Notes: generated by a model from the sequence alone, not told the origin. A DNA stretch of 54,904 bases, filler included, from Bipalium vagum (GCA_037834085.1; 3 parts of 3 records of this genome joined end to end with filler, not necessarily neighbours in it), one strand, 5' to 3'. Counted from the whole stretch's first letter, positions 710 through 13,300 are shown. Made by a program: numbers and translations.

Positions 710-3700
710 TTAATTGACTGCAATAATAATGACTAAGACAATAGCAACCAAAGCAGCAACTGTAGCATGAAGGCCCAGCATGAAATATTTGAACATCCGA
801 CCCTGATTAATAAATAATCTTTATTTTTAAGATAATATAACTCACTGATTGTTTCGGTGGCAACGGCTTGGTCTGAGGAGTCTGATTTGTGATCAAAGCT
901 GCGTTGTATTCTTCAAATTCCATTTCATAAGTTTGTCTTTTATCTGTAAATATAAGGAAAATGGTTATCTTTCTATTAAATATTGAAAATTTTTTTCAAT
1001 TAGTTTTTGTAAAGGATAAATTTGTTCACATTAAATATGAAAAATTGACTACTTTCACATTATTAAGTCTACATATATTGTTTAAATAAAACGAAATCTT
1101 GAAAACATGGCAATATTGAATTGTTCTGAAAATCACTTCGCATTTTTTTAGTAAAAGGTAAGTATTGGTAATAAATATTTTAATCAATGATGTATTGTCC
1201 TTTTTGTTCCAAGACCTTTGCCGTCCACCAGGCAATTTGAATATCTCAACCTTTAAAATTACTCAAGGGCTTTAAGTTAATATTTTAAAATAGGTATAAA
1301 AAATTGAAGTGACTTTCCGAACAGCCCAATACTACTGCTACTAGTAAAAAATAATAATAATAATTCAAATATTACCTTTATTACGTCTATAGTACAAGCA
1401 ACCGTGTATTTCTAGAATGATTTCGACAATAAATTGGAAAATAACGAAGACAATAAGAATCCACTGAGGATATTCTAATTGAGAAAGTTGAAATCCAGCT
1501 GCTGGAAGTCTCATTCCAATCATAATTGTTGGCACTGATAAGCAATAGGCAACTGTTCCAATAAAAAAATGAAACCAGTTAAACCACGGTCTATCTTTGG
1601 AACTGGGCTTGCATCGACAAAGGGCAACTAAAGGCTAAAGAACATAATGTTGAATTGAATAAGAATATAATTGTAAAATATCTTACATTTAAAAACGATA
1701 AAATAAAAACTATAATTCCCAAAATTGGATGAGCTTTATATGGTAGACTATCCAATTTTGAGTATCCACCAACATGGATAAATATAAGGATAAAAGAAAT
1801 CGTGGTTAATAAAACACAAGTGCCTTGAAGACATCTATGAATTTGAAACCATAACATTTCTTGAGCAATTCCGGTGTAAGGCCACATTTCTTTATAATAT
1901 CTAGCTAGAATGATTCCAACGGAGCTACAGAATATCCATGCTATAACCATAAGAATACCATGACTTTTCGCTAATGATGAATCGAATGACGATGTTCCAC
2001 TAACACCATTGAAGGAACCCCTATATAGATTAATTTAGTTAAAAGTTAAAGTAAAAATTAGTGCATACCTTGAAAAGTCAATAGGAATATCACTTAATAT
2101 TAAGCTACCCGAAGAAGGTTGACCCATACCATATTGAGTAGCTTCTGTACCTCTAACCGTTATCAAATAGTATTGGTTTCCCGGCGACAAATCCTTCAGT
2201 TGTAACGAAGCTTGTGATGGTTTCAATGCTCGCAAGAATCGACACATCAATCGTTTTGATATATCATTAAACTGACCACCATAACGTTTATTTCCAGTGG
2301 TAATCAGTAAATTCTATTTTTAAAAAATTGAATATTAAAACTTGTTCATATATCAACTCCATGTGTTTTTAACTTCAAAAAAAGAAACAAGAAATATATT
2401 ACAGATCAAACTAAAATAAATGCAAGAAAAGAGAATGCATTTACCATAGAAACTTCAATTGCATTGTAAATAGCATATGAAGTTTATTTCAACAATAACA
2501 TTACTTGAAAATTATTGATTAATTTATTAAGTCACGTCTTCATTAAAAGCAAAAATATTAAATAAATAAAAACTTTATTTCTCAAATTCACTTTTATTAA
2601 TCTAATATTTGATTTCACTTTTTGATAAATTTGTCCAGGGAAATACTTTAACTGTCTTTNNNNNNNNNNNNNNNNNNNNNNNNNNNNNNNNNNNNNNNNN
2701 NNNNNNNNNNNNNNNNNNNNNNNNNNNNNNNNNNNNNNNNNNNNNNNNNNNNNNNNNNNNNNNNNNNNNNNNNNNNNNNNNNNNNNNNNAATAATGTAAC
2801 AGATAAAAATGAATCATAAAAAAGATATTAATTAAAAAAGATATTTTACAAATGATTTACCATTGAATTTGTAACATCACAAATGATGTGCAAATTTATA
2901 TTTCAAATCTACTCATAGCTATATAGAACAGTTAATAATAAAATATTAATAAATTAAGTGATATAATTTATATTAAAAAATAATCTTATAATCACATTAA
3001 ATTTATCCAAACTTAATCCTGTTTATGATTACATTTACGAAACCACATTAAACGGTACTCAACTGATGTAAGTTTCATAACTTTCGGTCGCAGAATGAAT
3101 AATTTTTGTTTTATTTTATCTATTCTTTCAAAATAAATAATTAGGAGAAAAAACTTTGATTTCTCAAAATTTTCATTGTTTAAAATCTAACTGTAAAGTT
3201 TTGATCTTTCTCTCAGCGGGATCTGCAAATTAAAGTATTATGCAACAGAATCCGTGAAATTTTTCGATCTCCAATAATATTGTGTATTTACAAAACTTTT
3301 CACACATAAATAAATCACATACTCTTTAAAATAAGTAAATACAATTCAAAGATAAATAAATAAAATAGCGGAATACTTAACATGGAAATATTACATAACA
3401 ATTTTACAGTTCGTAATTGATTTATTACTGGAATTAAAAAGAGGGAAACTTATATTTCCAAAATTTAACAAAACCAAAGAAAAGTAAAAATATGCTTTAA
3501 TAAATTCATAATTTCAGAGGGTCGAAAGAAAATGATAAAATCTTATTAGTAATAAAAAAATTTTAAAATTAAGAATTATTAAAACAAAAAATCTGAAATT
3601 TTAGATTAATCATCGACAAAATATTTTATTTAATAATTACTTTTTCTGCTTTTCAGATTTTCTCCAATCGATTTCTACGACATTTTCAGAAAGAAATTAT

Positions 3701-5431
3701 TATTATATAATACGAAATACAGGTCTTAATTTATGACGAATCGAATATAAATGTCCATTTTACTAAATCAAAGCAGAATTACATAATTCCACAAATGCTT
3801 GACCAAGTCAGATCAAGAAATAAACAATTTTTCCAAAAGAACCCAGCTTAAGATTTTGTAGACAAATATAAATTTTGGCTTACATTCAGAAATAGCCGCA
3901 CGACTTTTTTGTTTAAAAAATCGGTTCACACACAATGATCGGCATCATTTCTATGATTAATCCGGTGCAGTTCTATGAGAAAAATGCACCCATTCACTGA
4001 CATGCACATCAATAATGATGAATTCCATTCCATTACTGTTTTACAGTTTCTCGGTCAATCGTTGGATTTTCTAAAGTCTGTGCTGCTTAATTAAATGTTT
4101 CTTCAGATTTTTTCGTTAGCGAAGGTTTTTTTACCGAAATTATTAGAAAAAATAATATAATGATAACAATATCTGACATTGGTTCACAAATCAACACAAA
4201 ATGAATTAATAAAATATTTATTATTTACAGAAGGAAATATCATTAATAAAAACTCGATTGCTTCATTGTGACCGATGAAGAACTGTGTATCATGAAAATA
4301 AACGTTCGGAAAAATGATATATTTCAAAGTGATAAACATAAAAAAATCGTTTAGATAATATTTTGTGAAAAAAAAATCACAGATAAAATGAAATGAAAAA
4401 TATTTTTTGATTAAGCTTCAGAAAACCATGACATTGTTGAATACTGTTTATAATACAGTTAATACCGCCAACAAACGTTATCTATTGATCAAAAGTTATT
4501 GGCTCACTTTTTTAGATCAATGTGGTTCTTAGTTATTTTCCAGAGAAATTTATTTATATTTTCGAAAAGTGATTGAACGGATTGTTATGTTATTTTCAGC
4601 GTACAAAAGTAAAATTGAATCAATATTTAATATTCTTTTGTTGTCCACGAAATCTAAGTTAATAGAAAGGAAATCTATATTTACACATAGAATGTTAAAA
4701 ACGCTAGTCTTCATTCGGTAATGGAACCGTCAAACGATGATAGTAATCTTAAATATTTTTAGCCTGTTATTAATACACGATTACTGTTGTAGGCTTGTGA
4801 ATGAGATTCAGTCTCTTAACAAATTTTTACTGTGCCATCGACCCAGTCTCTGCATTTCTTACTTTCATGTATGTAATACACATCAGTACAGTCAAAATGA
4901 TAATCGAGGAAAATAGTACCGAAAATTAATCAATTTTTACACTTGTTTGATGACGATTAATTTTTTAAATTGGTCAGATCATATTCATTCTATTTTAATA
5001 TAAAATGAAATGATACTTACATCATCGAAGAGAGTTTTAATATCTGATCGTTCACTATTTTCCAATGAGCCAGCAACAACCTTGACTTCTTTGTTTTCCA
5101 CGTAACAACTAACAAAACCATCATTTCCCTTAAAATTAGATTAAAAAAATCTCATATTTTTCAAAACTATTACCAGTGATTTATCTTCTGAAAACAAAAG
5201 CATGATGTAACCGTTATCACTGTAAACATTGCCTATCATCTCAAATTCTAAGAAATCCTTATCTTCATAGCGTATCGGTTTCCAAGAAATTCCAAATTCA
5301 CAATTGTCCACAGTGCATGCTCTAGATGTTTTAAAACATGCTTTGGTATGTTCACAGTCATAGAAAGACATTGATTCTATAGCGTAACATGAATAACTAA
5401 GTGATAATATCACTAGTATTTCTTTCAACAT
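710..5431 (-). CDS. Ferric-chelate reductase (FRRS1/SDR2-like): signal peptide + DOMON + cytochrome b561, complete, 464 aa
   Basis: Exons 5174-5431, 5021-5128, 2069-2313, 1687-2020, 1376-1634, 846-943, 710-802 are all GT-AG and phase-consistent, from ATG to TAA. The four b561 His are present (KSHGILM, FQIHRCLQ, KAHPILG, NWFHFFIG). DOMON-like N-terminus (GYIMLLFSEDKSLGNDGFVSC). No Reeler domain seen. Confidence 0.9.
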
Positions 5432-7060: not shown

Positions 7061-7150
7061 GTAATGTTTATTAATATTTATAATCTTAATTTATAAACAT
7101 AATAATATTTTGTAAAAATTATAATTGTGAGATAAATTGAAAATTAGTCG

Positions 7151-7216
7151 GGGGATGTAGCTCAGCGGTCAGAGCAGTGCATGTGAAGATCCAGGGTTCG
7201 AATCCCGGTATCTCCG
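7151..7216 (+). pseudogene. tRNA-Ala-derived sequence in 5' LTR (anticodon arm deleted)
   Basis: GGGGATGTAGCTCAGCGG (A box) ... GGTTCGAATCC (B box) ... TATCTCC, with a G3:U70 pair. Lacks 6 nt of the anticodon region relative to the 3' LTR. Confidence 0.8.
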
Positions 7217-7389
7217 ATTAATTTTCACTAACATGGCGACCACACCAGGACACCAACCAGCGGACGAGGTCTCGAAAGTGAAAATGAAAAGTAAAATGAA
7301 AGGAAATAGAATTAAGAGACTCGGGGCGGTTAAGGATATGGTTGTGAGCTTTAAAGGTGGGGGATGTGAGATAAATTGAAAATTAGTCG

Positions 7390-7461
7390 GGGGATGTAGC
7401 TCAGTGGTCAGAGCAGTGCATGCGCATGTGAAGGTCTAGGGTTCGAATCCCGTTATCTCCG
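7390..7461 (+). pseudogene. tRNA-Ala(CGC)-derived sequence in 3' LTR
   Basis: Colinear with eukaryotic tRNA-Ala, with A and B boxes intact. CGC sits at the anticodon position (loop TGCGCAT), but the anticodon stem does not pair. Confidence 0.8.
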
Positions 7462-7584
7462 ATTAATTTTTACTAACAATAATTATCAGTTTTCCTAATA
7501 TAAAATAAAATATTAATTTTTATTTTCATTAGATTATGTTCGGATTAAAAGTTTTTTAACTGTTTTATGAATGAGACAGATGAA

Positions 7585-7805
7585 AAGAAATGATGGAATG
7601 GAAATTGATTTTCAGGTCGTTCTCAGTCAAATACGTGTCAGGTGGGCGCATAATTAAAGTTCCGGGGTTTCTTATAGTTAATGAAAAAGAGAAGATGAAG
7701 GGTAATAAATGAAAGGAAATTGATAACTTTTTTCTCTCAGTCCACGAAAAGCTCCCGTTTTTTCACATCAGTTAATGAAAAACGAGAGAAGAGAAAGGTA
7801 ATGTA
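7585..7805 (+). repeat. Degenerate tandem duplication, unit about 110-120 bp
   Basis: Repeated ordered motifs GGAAATTGAT...TCTCAGTC...AGTTAATGAAAAA...AGAAGA...GGTAAT. Confidence 0.55.
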
Positions 7806-10382: not shown

Positions 10383-13300
10383 TCAAATAAGTGCCCATTG
10401 AACTATTGCCGTATCTTGTCCTCCTGCACTTATAACACGTTGATCCCCGGCAAGAAACATCACCCCAGTAACGTGACTACTATGACCTTTGTATGTTTTA
10501 TGACCAGCCTTAAAAGAATGATATAAAACAATAAAACAACATTTAAAAATAAAAAAACAATAGAGTAATCACTGAAATTATGGAAAAAATATAGAAATAA
10601 AAACAACCAAAATTATTTTTGTATGTATTGAGGAATTTTATTTATCGAAAACGTTTAAAACAGAAAATTTTCTTCAAGGAGATCTGTAATTATTTCATAG
10701 AGCATATTACAAAATTCGGCAAAAATATATTCTTGAAAAATCTTCATAAATTTACAGAATATAGACAAATAATCTTTTTGATAAAACCTATAAATTTTAT
10801 CAAAATAATCATTTTCCAATTAAATGAATGTTGACTGTCAGAAAATATCTATGATAATGTTCCAATAAATTAATAAATAATAATTTTATTGATTCTTCTA
10901 ACGAAAAGTTCTCTGTATTTTTAATGAATCTATACAAACTGTTATTTGTTTGACAAATAAAGTCAGTCAAATTAATGATAGAAAATAATAGAAAAATAGC
11001 ATAAATTGATTGACGTCAAGTTCTCTCTAATAATAAACAATAAATTTACTATTTTACCAAAGTGAGCTCTTAGTTCAAATCTTAAAACTTCTACAAGACA
11101 ATTAGAGTGAATTTTATGGAAAATTGATCTCAGTAATCTGAAATTATCAACAATCGCGAATAATTTGATTTTGTCAACAGGCGTAGAAAAATTTCATTTT
11201 CAGCCTGTCAGAATATCTTTACAGATTTTTCTCAGCGGCGCATTTACACAAACATGAAGCCTTTCCGAAACGATTTGTCGCCATAGTTATCACCGTTCCA
11301 ATAATAAATCTCAACAAACCACTTTAATACACGTAAAAAGAACCGACTTTGCTGAATTATTACCCAGATTTTATTTAAAGAGTCAATTTGACAAGCTATT
11401 TAAACAAATTGTTCTTATTGATTAGAGTGAGATATTTCCAAATAATGTAACTCAATTTTATATTTTCCTTATCAGAAAATGAGGTTTGTTAATTAAATCA
11501 ATTTATTTTCTATCCTTGCTTCAATGAAATCAGGAACCAAATTTTCCATAAATTAAACTAGTGTAATATTAATCATTAATAAATTAAATTCCTTTTAATT
11601 AAAGTATTTGGTTACTACATAATGTTTTGCCTATTTTTAGCATTATATTTCATGACTTCGACAATTTATCAAGCAAGAAAAAACTATTTAAACTAATATT
11701 TGTCTTAATTTACATTTGTTTGAATTTCCAGAAGTAATACAGGGATACCAAATTCAGTTAACATCAAATATTTCAAGTAATAAGAAATAATATAACGAAT
11801 TTAAAATATATGTTAAATGAAAGATGAATTCTTAGATTAAAAAAATTACAATTTCAGAAAAAATGAAATGATAAAAAATTTCTATTCAAATGCATTCATT
11901 TATCTTACCTTTGGAGTGTTTGATGGATAACGATACAAATTAACTTTTCCGAAATCATCAGCTGTTGCTGCCAAGGGTCTATCATGTGCTCTTGTAACGG
12001 CATTAATGTCTGTACCATCGGATCCTTCTGGCCAGATTCCGGTAACCTCAAAAGCCAATGTACAATTACAAGTGTGCCATTTGACATCAGAAAGTGTGCT
12101 TGGTGAAGTTATCTAAAAACATCAAATATTCAATACATTTCAAAATTTTAAAATCTCTACTTGTTTGCAATCTCCAGCTTTCCAAAACAGAATCTCATAA
12201 TCACCAGAATTACTTCGAAGATATTGACCATCGGACGACCAATCAATGTGGGTGATGAAACTAGAATGTCCGGAACATTTTCCAACTTTTGTTACCTCCG
12301 TACCTTCTGGATTTACTTTGTAAATATAAATCAGATTGTCTCTGGATCCAAGAGCCAAATATAAATTATCTGAAAAATATTACTATCATATCACATATAT
12401 ATACTGAAGAAATCTCTTACCTGGACTAAATTCACAACATTGTATAGGTTCGTTTCCATCTCTTCCTTGGTACAAGCTTTTAAGTTCTTCAGCATCGTAA
12501 ATGAACCAATACCCTTCCAAACAACCGAGACCCAATAAATTCCCTTCAGAATTAATACAAGTAGATTGGATGCTTTTCTCTATCTGCTTCCATAATAGGA
12601 CATTATGACTAACAGAATCCCACACGATTATTTTACGATCATGACCGGTACTTATAAATTTTTCTTTTGTGGGATGACTAGAGATGCCCCACACTTCATC
12701 AAAATGTCCATTCAATAAGCTAATTGACTCGTTGCTTTCCGTAATCTTAATAATTATTAAGAAATTATTTTTTGATCGATATTAATTAAGAACTCACTTC
12801 TAAAATTCCATTATTTGTTGTACCGACTATTAAATGATCATCAACTTCAGAGACAACTCTGCAACATCCCTGATCACTTGTTAACTCAATACTTCGTCCT
12901 GATTTTTCTTTCGTACTCAAATCCCATTCTTGAATCATATGATCTTTTCCACCCCCAGATATAAGTGTACCATTTTTACTGATCAATAAGGAAAATATAG
13001 GACCATTGTGAGCTTGGATGATTGTCGAAATAATGGATCTTTTTTCTAAATCCATTATCATTTTATTTCAAAGAGAATCTTCAACTTACCCTTGCTCCAA
13101 AAGAAAATATTCCCCGTTGAATCGCCACTGATAAGATCTCCGCTGTTCGTGAATGTAACGCAAGTGACAAATTTTGGTTTCTCATATTTCTTAACAATTT
13201 AAAATATAATTAAAATTAAAATAATTTAATAAATTTTAAATTTAACATGAAAATTATGATTAAAACACACCTCAAAAATTGCCATTTTCTTAATCAAGTT

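What the first reader, a model, noticed from the sequence alone, without database searches (positions are those of the whole stretch)
7121..7483. Miniature LTR retrotransposon whose LTRs are built around a captured tRNA-Ala gene
Seen: what looks like two tandem tRNA pseudogenes is a complete 353-bp element: TSD ATAAT, LTR (TG..CA, 108 bp), PBS, 131-bp noncoding interior, PPT, LTR (114 bp), TSD ATAAT. About 60% of each LTR is tRNA-Ala-derived with intact A and B boxes. Known: plant Cassandra TRIMs carry 5S rRNA Pol III promoters in their LTRs. From memory (verify), tRNA-bearing TRIMs have been described as Helenus, with 4-bp TSDs in animals, whereas this TSD is 5 bp. Inference: a SINE-like Pol III promoter on an LTR-retrotransposon chassis, mobilised in trans by an autonomous element, possibly an undescribed family. 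tRNA finders would mislabel it as a tRNA pseudogene.
Basis: partly seen in the sequence, partly recalled or inferred. Interest (0 to 1): 0.9.

Follow-up and report, generated by a model that had tools for sequence, protein, structure and literature searches.

The report
Miniature LTR retrotransposon with tRNA-derived LTRs
This is a real 353-bp non-coding LTR retrotransposon whose two terminal repeats are built around a decayed tRNA-Ala copy; it belongs to the recently described "Helenus" kind, is present in hundreds to thousands of copies in this genome, and probably borrows the enzymes of a Gypsy-type element.

Summary
Window 7126-7478 is LTR (108 bp), a 131-bp non-coding interior, then LTR (114 bp). 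The element runs TG..CA and is flanked by ATAAT/ATAAT. Each LTR holds a tRNA-like module that passes Rfam's tRNA threshold and has intact A and B boxes.

It is not a local duplication. The own genome holds many copies at 85-92% identity. Of 20 distinct full copies, 13 have perfect, mutually different 5-bp target-site duplications. Solo LTRs outnumber full elements about 3:1.

The 18 nt after the 5' LTR match the 3' end of the host tRNA-Arg(ACG) at 17 of 18 positions (18 of 18 in one copy). A purine tract abuts the 3' LTR.

A candidate helper exists: a Ty3/Gypsy-type family with 256-bp LTRs. It shares the LTR termini (TGTGAG...CA[G/A]CTAACA), the PBS type, the PPT type and the 5-bp duplication.

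By definition this is a Helenus-type TRIM (Kojima 2024). It differs from every animal Helenus listed there, which all give 4-bp duplications, and five of its signature motifs are absent from that paper's sequence file.

The host taxon is unresolved.

Verdict: a new member, or minor variant, of a known kind.

The parts
7121..7125 (.). Left copy of the 5-bp target-site duplication (ATAAT)
   Evidence: It is identical to 7479-7483. Thirteen of 20 full copies elsewhere have perfect 5-bp duplications of other sequences.
7126..7233 (+). 5' LTR, 108 bp, TGTGAG...CACTAACA
   Evidence: Genome-wide matches begin and end at these bases.
7126..7150 (+). 25-bp LTR head (U3-like). It carries the TGTGAG terminus shared with Gypsy family B and an ATAAAT motif 14-19 nt upstream of the tRNA-like start.
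   Evidence: A role for ATAAAT is inference only.
7151..7216 (+). tRNA-Ala-like module of the 5' LTR. A box TAGCTCAGCGG is at 7158-7168 and B box GGTTCGAATCC at 7195-7205. The anticodon arm is truncated.
   Evidence: Rfam tRNA 39.3 bits. ARAGORN finds no tRNA. The acceptor and D arm match host tRNA-Ala genes.
7222..7225 (+). T4 run 5 nt after the tRNA-like end and 8 nt before the LTR end; a Pol III terminator-like site
   Evidence: In all 20 full copies this is the only run of four or more T per LTR on the sense strand.
7234..7251 (+). Primer-binding site, 18 nt, complementary to the 3' end (positions 59-76 including CCA) of host tRNA-Arg(ACG)
   Evidence: tRNA gene in L081: 17 of 18 positions match, and copy L013 has 18 of 18. 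There are 746 places in the genome at up to 2 mismatches, against 0 in the controls.
7234..7364 (+). Non-coding interior, 131 bp, purine-rich (69% A+G)
   Evidence: No ORF. Its length is conserved at 129-132 bp in 20 copies.
7353..7364 (+). Polypurine tract AAAGGTGGGGGA abutting the 3' LTR
   Evidence: Most copies have AAAGGAGGGGGA at the same place. Family B has AGGGGGGA there.
7365..7478 (+). 3' LTR, 114 bp
7390..7461 (+). tRNA-Ala-like module of the 3' LTR. A box is at 7397-7407 and B box at 7440-7450. It retains CGCATGTGAA, matching the anticodon CGC and the 3' anticodon stem of host tRNA-Ala(CGC).
   Evidence: Rfam tRNA 36.4 bits. It folds as a loose cloverleaf with an unremarkable energy.
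7467..7471 (+). T5 run of the 3' LTR; the likely end of a Pol III transcript, if one is made
7479..7483 (.). Right copy of the target-site duplication (ATAAT)

Best explanation
Window 7126-7478 is one moderately old copy of a high-copy terminal-repeat retrotransposon in miniature (TRIM) of the Helenus/TRIMp3 kind. It is a non-coding LTR retroelement in which each LTR consists of a 25-bp head, a decayed tRNA-Ala(CGC)-derived module with intact Pol III A and B boxes, a T4-5 run and an 8-bp tail.

Shown: it spread by LTR-type retrotransposition. The evidence is distinct 5-bp target duplications at many loci, abundant solo LTRs, a PBS that is the complement of the last 18 nt of host tRNA-Arg(ACG), and a PPT at the 3' LTR.

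Inferred: it encodes nothing, so reverse transcriptase and integrase come in trans. The most likely source is a Ty3/Gypsy-type family in the same genome ('family B', 256-bp LTRs). Family B has the same LTR termini (TGTGAG...CA[G/A]CTAACA), the same PBS type, a GGGGGA-type PPT and the same 5-bp duplication.

Inferred, not tested: the template RNA starts at the tRNA-like promoter of the 5' LTR (Pol III), reads through the weak T4 there and ends at the T run of the 3' LTR. On that model R is about 75 nt (the tRNA-like module), U3 is 25 nt and U5 is 8 nt.
For: Structure at the stated coordinates.

tRNA-like modules score above the Rfam threshold.

Copy number. At least 40 scored full-length copies at 85-92% identity, out of 3088 first-look candidates. 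505 exact copies of a 22-mer from the tRNA-like part. 391 exact LTR ends.

TSDs. Thirteen of 20 distinct full copies have perfect 5-bp duplications, all different, and 3 more match at 4 of 5 positions.

Solo LTRs. Only 22 of 100 sampled LTR ends are followed by the PBS, which implies roughly 3 solo LTRs per full element.

PBS. It matches tRNA-Arg(ACG) at 17-18 of 18 positions and ends exactly before A58. There are 746 genomic places against 0 in controls.

Priming. Loci L069 and L080 carry an LTR end of this type followed by a much longer copy of tRNA-Arg. That is the signature of plus-strand synthesis reading on into the primer, so this tRNA really primes elements with this terminus.

Family B. 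zf-CCHC gag, RVP protease, and Integrase_H2C2 plus rve at the 3' end. Its nearest relatives have PR-RVT_1-RT_RNaseH-IN order. A deletion derivative with the same PBS carries RT_RNaseH_2. Its solo LTRs show 5 perfect 5-bp TSDs and one 4/5. The termini are shared with the TRIM.

No free SINE. About 95 of 100 sampled tRNA-like 22-mers are followed by the LTR tail.

The class is defined in Kojima 2024.
Against: The T4 run in the 5' LTR would stop Pol III before the PBS unless it is read through.

The absence of other T4 runs on the sense strand is not significant on its own. About 0.9 would be expected by chance, and all the copies share ancestry.

A and B boxes are only slightly better conserved among copies than the rest of the LTR.

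The partner assignment rests on short shared termini, PBS, PPT and TSD length. There is no shared interior sequence. At least four other LTR families carry the same PBS.
Confidence: 0.85

Rival explanations
1. It is a genuine TRIM, but the tRNA-like module is a passenger. The template RNA would be made by Pol II, either from the short LTR head (ATAAAT motif) or as read-through from host genes, and the A and B boxes would play no part in mobility.
For: The T4 terminator-like run sits between the tRNA-like module and the PBS in every 5' LTR, which is awkward for a Pol III template. Box conservation is barely above background. The fold energy of the module is unremarkable. Kojima 2024 himself notes that Pol III use by Helenus is unvalidated.
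Against: Only 25 bp of LTR lie upstream of the module, which is very little for a Pol II promoter. The module fills 61-63% of a minimal LTR and has kept canonical A and B boxes and a tRNA-gene-like T run through a large amplification. In Cassandra, the 5S analogue, Pol III transcription from LTR to LTR is reported (as cited in PMC10886601).
Confidence: 0.3
2. It is not a retrotransposon: two tandem tRNA pseudogenes, or a tandemly duplicated tRNA-derived SINE.
For: There are two tRNA-like hits 239 bp apart on the same strand.
Against: The same two-repeat unit, with the same interior, occurs at many unlinked loci. Each is bounded by TG..CA and by its own 5-bp duplication. PBS and PPT sit exactly at the inner LTR edges. 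Solo LTRs are present. There is no A-rich or LINE-like tail. The tRNA-like 22-mer is almost never seen outside the LTR context.
Confidence: 0.01
3. The LTR modules are working tRNA-Ala genes that are being spread by the element, expanding the tRNA gene set.
For: The acceptor stem with G3:U70, the D arm and the T arm are tRNA-Ala-like.
Against: The anticodon arm is destroyed: 10-16 nt stand in place of 17, and there is no U33. ARAGORN rejects it. The discriminator is G rather than the A of tRNA-Ala (the A73 expectation is from my own knowledge). Half of the 20 full copies carry 6-26-bp deletions inside the module.
Confidence: 0.02

Closest known systems
Helenus (TRIMp3; Kojima 2024, Biology 13:119, PMC10886601)
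   Same: [quoted passage not shown] It also shares PBS and PPT, conserved A and B boxes, a non-functional tRNA, a size within the 311-1263 bp range, the presence of solo LTRs, and copy numbers of hundreds to thousands. Animal Helenus families are inferred to depend on Gypsy elements, as this one is.
   Different: All 90-odd animal families in Table S1 as far as it was read (part 1 of 2) give 4-bp TSDs, and the paper's text says the same of animal Helenus in general; this one gives 5 bp. The module is tRNA-Ala-like, whereas the hymenopteran families were aligned to tRNA-Lys. The PBS is tRNA-Arg(ACG); the only Arg-primed families listed use Arg-TCT with a different sequence. Five signature motifs of this element are absent from the paper's sequence file. 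Here the candidate partner shares the LTR termini. In the paper the link was made through PBS-region similarity, plus interior similarity in one fungal case.
Cassandra and Ajax (TRIMs with a 5S rRNA-derived Pol III promoter in the LTR)
   Same: The same architecture: a small-RNA-gene promoter and terminator inside each LTR of a TRIM. Ajax also gives 5-bp TSDs in an animal.
   Different: Their module derives from 5S rRNA (type 1 promoter: box A, IE, box C), not from a tRNA (type 2: boxes A and B). There is no sequence relation.
Ordinary animal TRIMs (PbTRIM of ants, PMC3532108)
   Same: Short LTRs, a non-coding interior with PBS and PPT, abundant solo LTRs, and dependence on a helper.
   Different: PbTRIM has a TATA-box U3 (Pol II), a tRNA-Leu PBS, 4-bp ATAT duplications, 152-184-bp LTRs and no small-RNA module.
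tRNA-derived SINEs (SINE2)
   Same: A tRNA-derived head with A and B boxes, non-coding, high copy number, and mislabelled by tRNA scans.
   Different: SINEs have no LTRs, PBS or PPT. They end in a LINE-like or A-rich tail, are copied by LINE machinery, and have variable-length duplications (general knowledge; contrast drawn). No free SINE with this head was seen.

Membership tests
Helenus (TRIM with tRNA-derived LTR) | Two direct terminal repeats bounded by TG..CA around a short non-coding interior | tested here: met
   LTRs of 100-115 bp and interiors of 129-132 bp in 20 copies. No ORF.
Helenus (TRIM with tRNA-derived LTR) | tRNA-derived sequence inside each LTR, with box A (TRGCY..YGG) and box B (GGTTC) kept | tested here: met
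   Rfam tRNA 39.3 and 36.4 bits. TAGCTCAGCGG and GGTTCGAATCC are present in both LTRs.
Helenus (TRIM with tRNA-derived LTR) | PBS next to the 5' LTR and PPT next to the 3' LTR | tested here: met
   The PBS matches host tRNA-Arg(ACG) at 17-18 of 18 positions. The PPT is AAAGG[T/A]GGGGGA.
Helenus (TRIM with tRNA-derived LTR) | Dispersed copies with target-site duplications of fixed length | tested here: met
   Thirteen of 20 copies have perfect 5-bp TSDs. The length differs from the 4 bp of all listed animal families but equals that of the fungal and plant families.
Helenus (TRIM with tRNA-derived LTR) | Sequence relationship to an already named Helenus family | tested here: not met
   Five motifs of 10-18 nt from the LTR, PBS and junction are absent from the paper's DataS1.fa. 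Caveat: line wrapping could hide some matches, and Repbase and Dfam were not available.
TRIMp3 (Pol III-transcribed TRIM) | Template RNA made by RNA polymerase III from the LTR promoter | not testable with these tools
Only promoter boxes and T runs are seen.
Cassandra / Ajax | 5S rRNA-derived sequence in the LTR | tested here: not met
   An Rfam scan of the window finds only tRNA, no 5S.
tRNA-derived SINE | Single tRNA-like head, LINE-like or A-rich tail, no LTR, PBS or PPT | tested here: not met
Ty3/Gypsy (candidate helper, family B; not in the window) | Order gag-PR-RT-RNaseH-IN with RVT_1 and Integrase_H2C2/rve | tested here: inconclusive
   The own-genome pieces show zf-CCHC, RVP, and Integrase_H2C2 plus rve next to the 3' LTR. 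A same-PBS derivative has RT_RNaseH_2. The full domain order is seen only in outside relatives at 45-60% identity. No full own copy could be read.

The most novel reading that the evidence does not exclude
This is an undescribed Helenus lineage, and the first animal one that makes 5-bp duplications. It arose independently from a tRNA-Ala(CGC) copy. It is paired with an identifiable Gypsy-type helper that shares its integrase-recognition termini and its tRNA-Arg primer. It may sit in a phylum where none has been reported: two of the assembly's three COX1 contigs need the flatworm/echinoderm mitochondrial code. With its T4 run between promoter and PBS, it would be a compact natural system for asking how a Pol III-made RNA gets past its own terminator to become an LTR-retrotransposon template.
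Probability: 0.45. Interest if true: 0.5.

Novelty: new member of a known kind. Interest (0 to 1): 0.38.

Why it matters
Practical. Each full element adds two, and each solo LTR one, tRNA-like hits above Rfam's threshold. With hundreds to thousands of LTRs, this family would inflate tRNA or pseudogene counts in any annotation of this genome and should be masked as a repeat.

Biological. It extends the small set of LTR retroelements that carry a Pol III promoter. It breaks the published generalisation that animal Helenus families make 4-bp duplications. It also offers a concrete helper candidate chosen by shared LTR termini, which is rare for this class.

The class itself is already described, so this is an incremental finding.

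Tried and rejected

Searches that found nothing:
- A tRNA gene whose 3' end matches the PBS 18 of 18, with acceptor GACCACA: none.
- The PBS preceded by a wholly different LTR end: none for that strict pattern. Other families were later found by sampling.
- One metagenome scan for a 33-mer of the LTR: 0 hits.
- Papers: no later report on Helenus beyond citations.

Organism:
- The look-up of encoding contigs found nothing.
- The listing of cluster members returned no names.
- The protein atlas gave only generic WD40 or retropepsin clusters.
- COX1 contigs are heterogeneous, so the taxon stays open.

Weak tests I do not lean on:
- T-run depletion on the sense strand: expected about 0.9 extra runs, observed 0, and the copies are not independent.
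- Fold energies of the tRNA-like RNA: z-scores from -0.1 to -0.8.
- Region-wise conservation among 40 LTRs: 1.5-6% deviation with no clear promoter signal.

Also noted:
- Interior similarity between the TRIM and family B beyond PBS and PPT: none seen by eye. This was not run as a BLAST of TRIM against family B.

Full report
**1. The observation**

- ATAAT at 7121-7125.
- A repeat at 7126-7233 (108 bp) that begins TGTGAG and ends CTAACA.
- A 131-bp stretch at 7234-7364.
- The repeat again at 7365-7478 (114 bp).
- ATAAT again at 7479-7483.

The repeat finder and the alignment of the two repeats with their flanks show that similarity begins at TG and ends at CA. The repeats differ by one 6-bp indel and five substitutions (95.4% identity outside the gap).

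Rfam's tRNA model matches 7151-7216 (39.3 bits) and 7390-7461 (36.4 bits), against a gathering score of 29. ARAGORN reports nothing. The tRNA-like part is 61-63% of each LTR.

**2. Is it a mobile element or a local duplication?**

The window's own assembly has 440.8 Mb in 272,664 contigs. It returned 40 scored matches to the whole element at 85-92% identity, out of 3088 first-look candidates. Almost all of these matches start at query base 5-6 and end at 358-360, which are the TG and the CA.

Mapping LTR and interior separately on the fetched loci shows the same LTR-interior-LTR layout everywhere. Among 20 distinct full copies:
- 13 have perfect 5-bp duplications, all different from each other (for example TAGTT, ATCTG, TACCC, GTGAC);
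- three more match at 4 of 5 positions.

Interiors are 129-132 bp long. The two LTRs of a copy are 89.6-99.1% identical, so the family was active over a long period. The window's copy is middle-aged.

Abundance:
- An exact 22-mer from the tRNA-like part occurs 505 times.
- An exact 20-mer of the LTR end occurs 391 times.
- Of the first 100 LTR ends, listed in contig order, only 22 are followed by the PBS.

After allowing for the pattern's last-base filter, that last figure implies roughly three solo LTRs per full element. This disposes of the 'tandem tRNA pseudogenes or SINE dimer' reading.

**3. Priming signals**

The interior begins with TGGCGACCACACCAGGAC. This 18-mer occurs 746 times in the genome at up to 2 mismatches, against none for the reversed control.

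A scan for T-arm-plus-acceptor ends of the form ...GGTCG found a multi-copy gene that ARAGORN calls tRNA-Arg(ACG). It ends ...GTTCGAGTCCTGGCGTGGTCG and is followed by a T run.
- With CCA added, its last 18 nt (positions 59-76) are complementary to the PBS at 17 of 18 positions.
- Copy L013 carries the 18 of 18 version.
- The match stops exactly before A58, the classical stop of plus-strand strong-stop synthesis (that interpretation is from general retroviral knowledge).

The same scan turned up loci L069 and L080. There, an LTR end ...AACTAACA is followed by TGG and then 36-73 nt of tRNA-Arg sequence. This is what is expected when plus-strand synthesis reads further into the primer. I take it as direct evidence that this tRNA primes elements with this LTR terminus.

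The interior ends with AAAGGTGGGGGA against the 3' LTR. Most other copies have AAAGGAGGGGGA.

**4. The tRNA-like module**

Host tRNA-Ala genes read ...ATGTAGCTCAGTGGTAGAGCGTTCGCTTCGCA (anticodon CGC) and ...TTTGCA (anticodon TGC).

The LTR module compares as follows.
- It shares the acceptor 5' strand and the D arm, with one extra C in the D loop.
- It keeps G3:U70 and a canonical T arm.
- In the 114-bp LTR form it retains CGCATGTGAA, which matches the anticodon CGC plus the 3' anticodon stem.
- The 5' half of the anticodon arm is scrambled.
- There is no encoded CCA, and a G stands at the discriminator position.

So 'tRNA-Ala-derived' is right, and the source was probably the CGC isoacceptor. 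It is not a working tRNA.

The A box (TAGCTCAGCGG) and B box (GGTTCGAATCC) are canonical. The RNA folds into a loose cloverleaf that is no more stable than shuffled sequence.

About 95 of 100 sampled occurrences of the module's 3' 22-mer are followed by the LTR tail ATTAATTTTCA(A)CTAACA. I therefore saw no free SINE with this head.

**5. Who moves it?**

Of 30 loci sampled in contig order by the exact PBS, 23 are copies of this TRIM and 7 belong to other LTR families. One such family ('B'), reached through L080, has the following features.
- A 256-bp AT-rich LTR that begins TGTGAGTATT and ends GCA[G/A]CTAACA, with 1281 first-look candidates.
- Interiors that start with a decayed form of the same PBS and end ...AGAAGGGGGGA.
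- ORF pieces that hit zf-CCHC, RVP and, next to the 3' LTR, Integrase_H2C2/zf-H2C2 and rve.

The protease-region piece finds relatives (45-60% identity for the ones scanned) whose Pfam order is protease, RVT_1, RT_RNaseH, Integrase_H2C2, rve. That order is Ty3/Gypsy, not Copia or BEL. A deletion derivative with the exact PBS (L043) runs straight into RT_RNaseH_2.

Solo LTRs of family B carry 5-bp duplications: 5 perfect and one 4/5.

The TRIM's LTRs begin TGTGAGAT and end CA(A/G/-)CTAACA. So the TRIM and family B share 6 nt at the 5' terminus, about 9 nt at the 3' terminus, the primer tRNA, the PPT type and the duplication length. That is the usual basis for pairing a TRIM with its helper, and I think family B or a close relative is the helper.

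It is an inference, for three reasons. No interior similarity was seen. Other families share the PBS.

**6. How the template RNA is made**

What the sequence shows is as follows.
- Only 25 bp of LTR precede the module.
- Every LTR of all 20 full copies has exactly one run of four or more T on the sense strand. It lies 5 nt after the module and 7-8 nt before the LTR end. There is none anywhere else in the element.

This layout mimics a tRNA gene with its terminator. [quoted passage not shown] Here that would make R about 75 nt, U3 25 nt and U5 8 nt.

The difficulty is that the 5' LTR's own T4 must be read through. The lack of other T runs is not statistically telling, since about 0.9 would be expected and the copies share ancestry. 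Promoter boxes are only marginally better conserved among copies than the rest of the LTR. A Pol II or read-through template therefore remains a live rival.

**7. Comparison with what is known**

[quoted passage not shown] By that definition this element is a Helenus.

It differs in four respects.
- TSD length. Every animal family in the part of Table S1 that I read (part 1 of 2: ctenophore, fishes, bivalves, brachiopod, nemerteans and the first wasp families) has a 4-bp TSD or none determined. The paper's text states 4 bp for animal Helenus generally. Five base pairs is reported only for fungi and Selaginella (and for the 5S-bearing Ajax). This family gives 5 bp, in step with its 5-bp Gypsy-type candidate helper.
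- tRNA source. The hymenopteran families were aligned to tRNA-Lys, not tRNA-Ala.
- Primer. The listed Arg-primed families use tRNA-Arg-TCT with a different PBS.
- Sequence. Five signature motifs of this element are absent from the paper's sequence file.

Ant PbTRIM (PMC3532108) is an ordinary Pol II TRIM with 4-bp ATAT duplications and a tRNA-Leu PBS. I found no later paper that extends Helenus. Repbase and Dfam could not be consulted.

**8. Host**

The flanking genes are animal-type.
- Exons of an echinoderm-microtubule-associated-protein-like gene lie at 12143-13061 (minus strand).
- A cytochrome b561-type exon lies at 1594-1950 (minus strand).

The element lies between them, about 1.7 kb upstream of a signal-peptide-like first ORF at 5431.

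The assembly contains at least three divergent COX1 sequences. Two of them make sense only if AAA = Asn, ATA = Ile and AGA = Ser, which is the flatworm/echinoderm code. A third looks like an ordinary invertebrate COX1. My reading of the conserved positions there is from general knowledge. I therefore leave the taxon open and cannot say whether it lies inside a group where Helenus is already catalogued.

**9. Verdict**

The element is a genuine, high-copy Helenus-type TRIM: a new member of a known kind, with a minor departure from the published animal pattern. The kind itself was described in 2024, and the one mechanistically interesting claim (Pol III-driven LTR retrotransposition) remains untested here. 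Interest is moderate to low.

I have referred the one experiment that would need a working helper.

Noticed in passing
L069:100-200 and L080:1480-1530 (own-genome contigs C104860 and C255542): An LTR end ...AACTAACA is followed by TGG and then 36-73 nt of tRNA-Arg(ACG) sequence. In L069 this is a whole tRNA copy that ARAGORN calls tRNA-Arg. It looks like plus-strand strong-stop synthesis reading far into the primer tRNA. L065 and L079 show similar junctions.
   Followed up: partly
Loci L004, L010-L013, L022, L023, L027, L056 and window 7126-7233: Ten of 20 full copies have a 6-26-bp deletion inside the tRNA-like module in only one of their two LTRs (7 in the 5' LTR, 3 in the 3' LTR). Four independent copies share the same 13-bp loss, between the direct repeats TCCCGG, which removes the B box. 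This could be slippage at the T-arm hairpin, possibly during reverse transcription. The 7:3 skew is not significant.
   Followed up: partly
L031, L032, L033 (contigs C253947, C246471, C253320): The assembly holds at least three divergent COX1 genes. Two need the flatworm/echinoderm mitochondrial code (AAA=Asn, ATA=Ile) and one looks like another invertebrate. This points either to nuclear copies or to more than one organism in the assembly.
   Followed up: partly
L066, L071-L074, L082 (short contigs of about 210-570 bp): Many short contigs carry only the 3' half of tRNA-Arg, from the anticodon loop onwards and with the gene's own T-run trailer. It is preceded by unrelated AT-rich sequence that is similar between contigs. 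This may be a repeat built on a half-tRNA, or tRNA genes with a large insertion.
   Followed up: no
L034, L049, L058; L043 and L065; L048 and L059; L051: At least four further LTR families carry the exact 18-nt tRNA-Arg PBS behind different LTR ends (...ATATAACT, ...ATTAACA, ...GATTTAAC, ...GTAACTAACA). L043 is a deletion derivative in which the PBS runs in frame into the RT-RNase H region.
   Followed up: partly
window 7578-7724, and the L081 spacer: Purine-rich GAAATG-like imperfect repeats lie just downstream of the element. They resemble part of the TRIM interior (38 nt at 82%) and the spacer between two tRNA-Arg genes. This is probably a common low-complexity motif of this genome.
   Followed up: no
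window 2660-2789: A run of N (assembly gap or masked) lies inside the cytochrome b561/DOMON-like gene region. It was left untouched.
   Followed up: no
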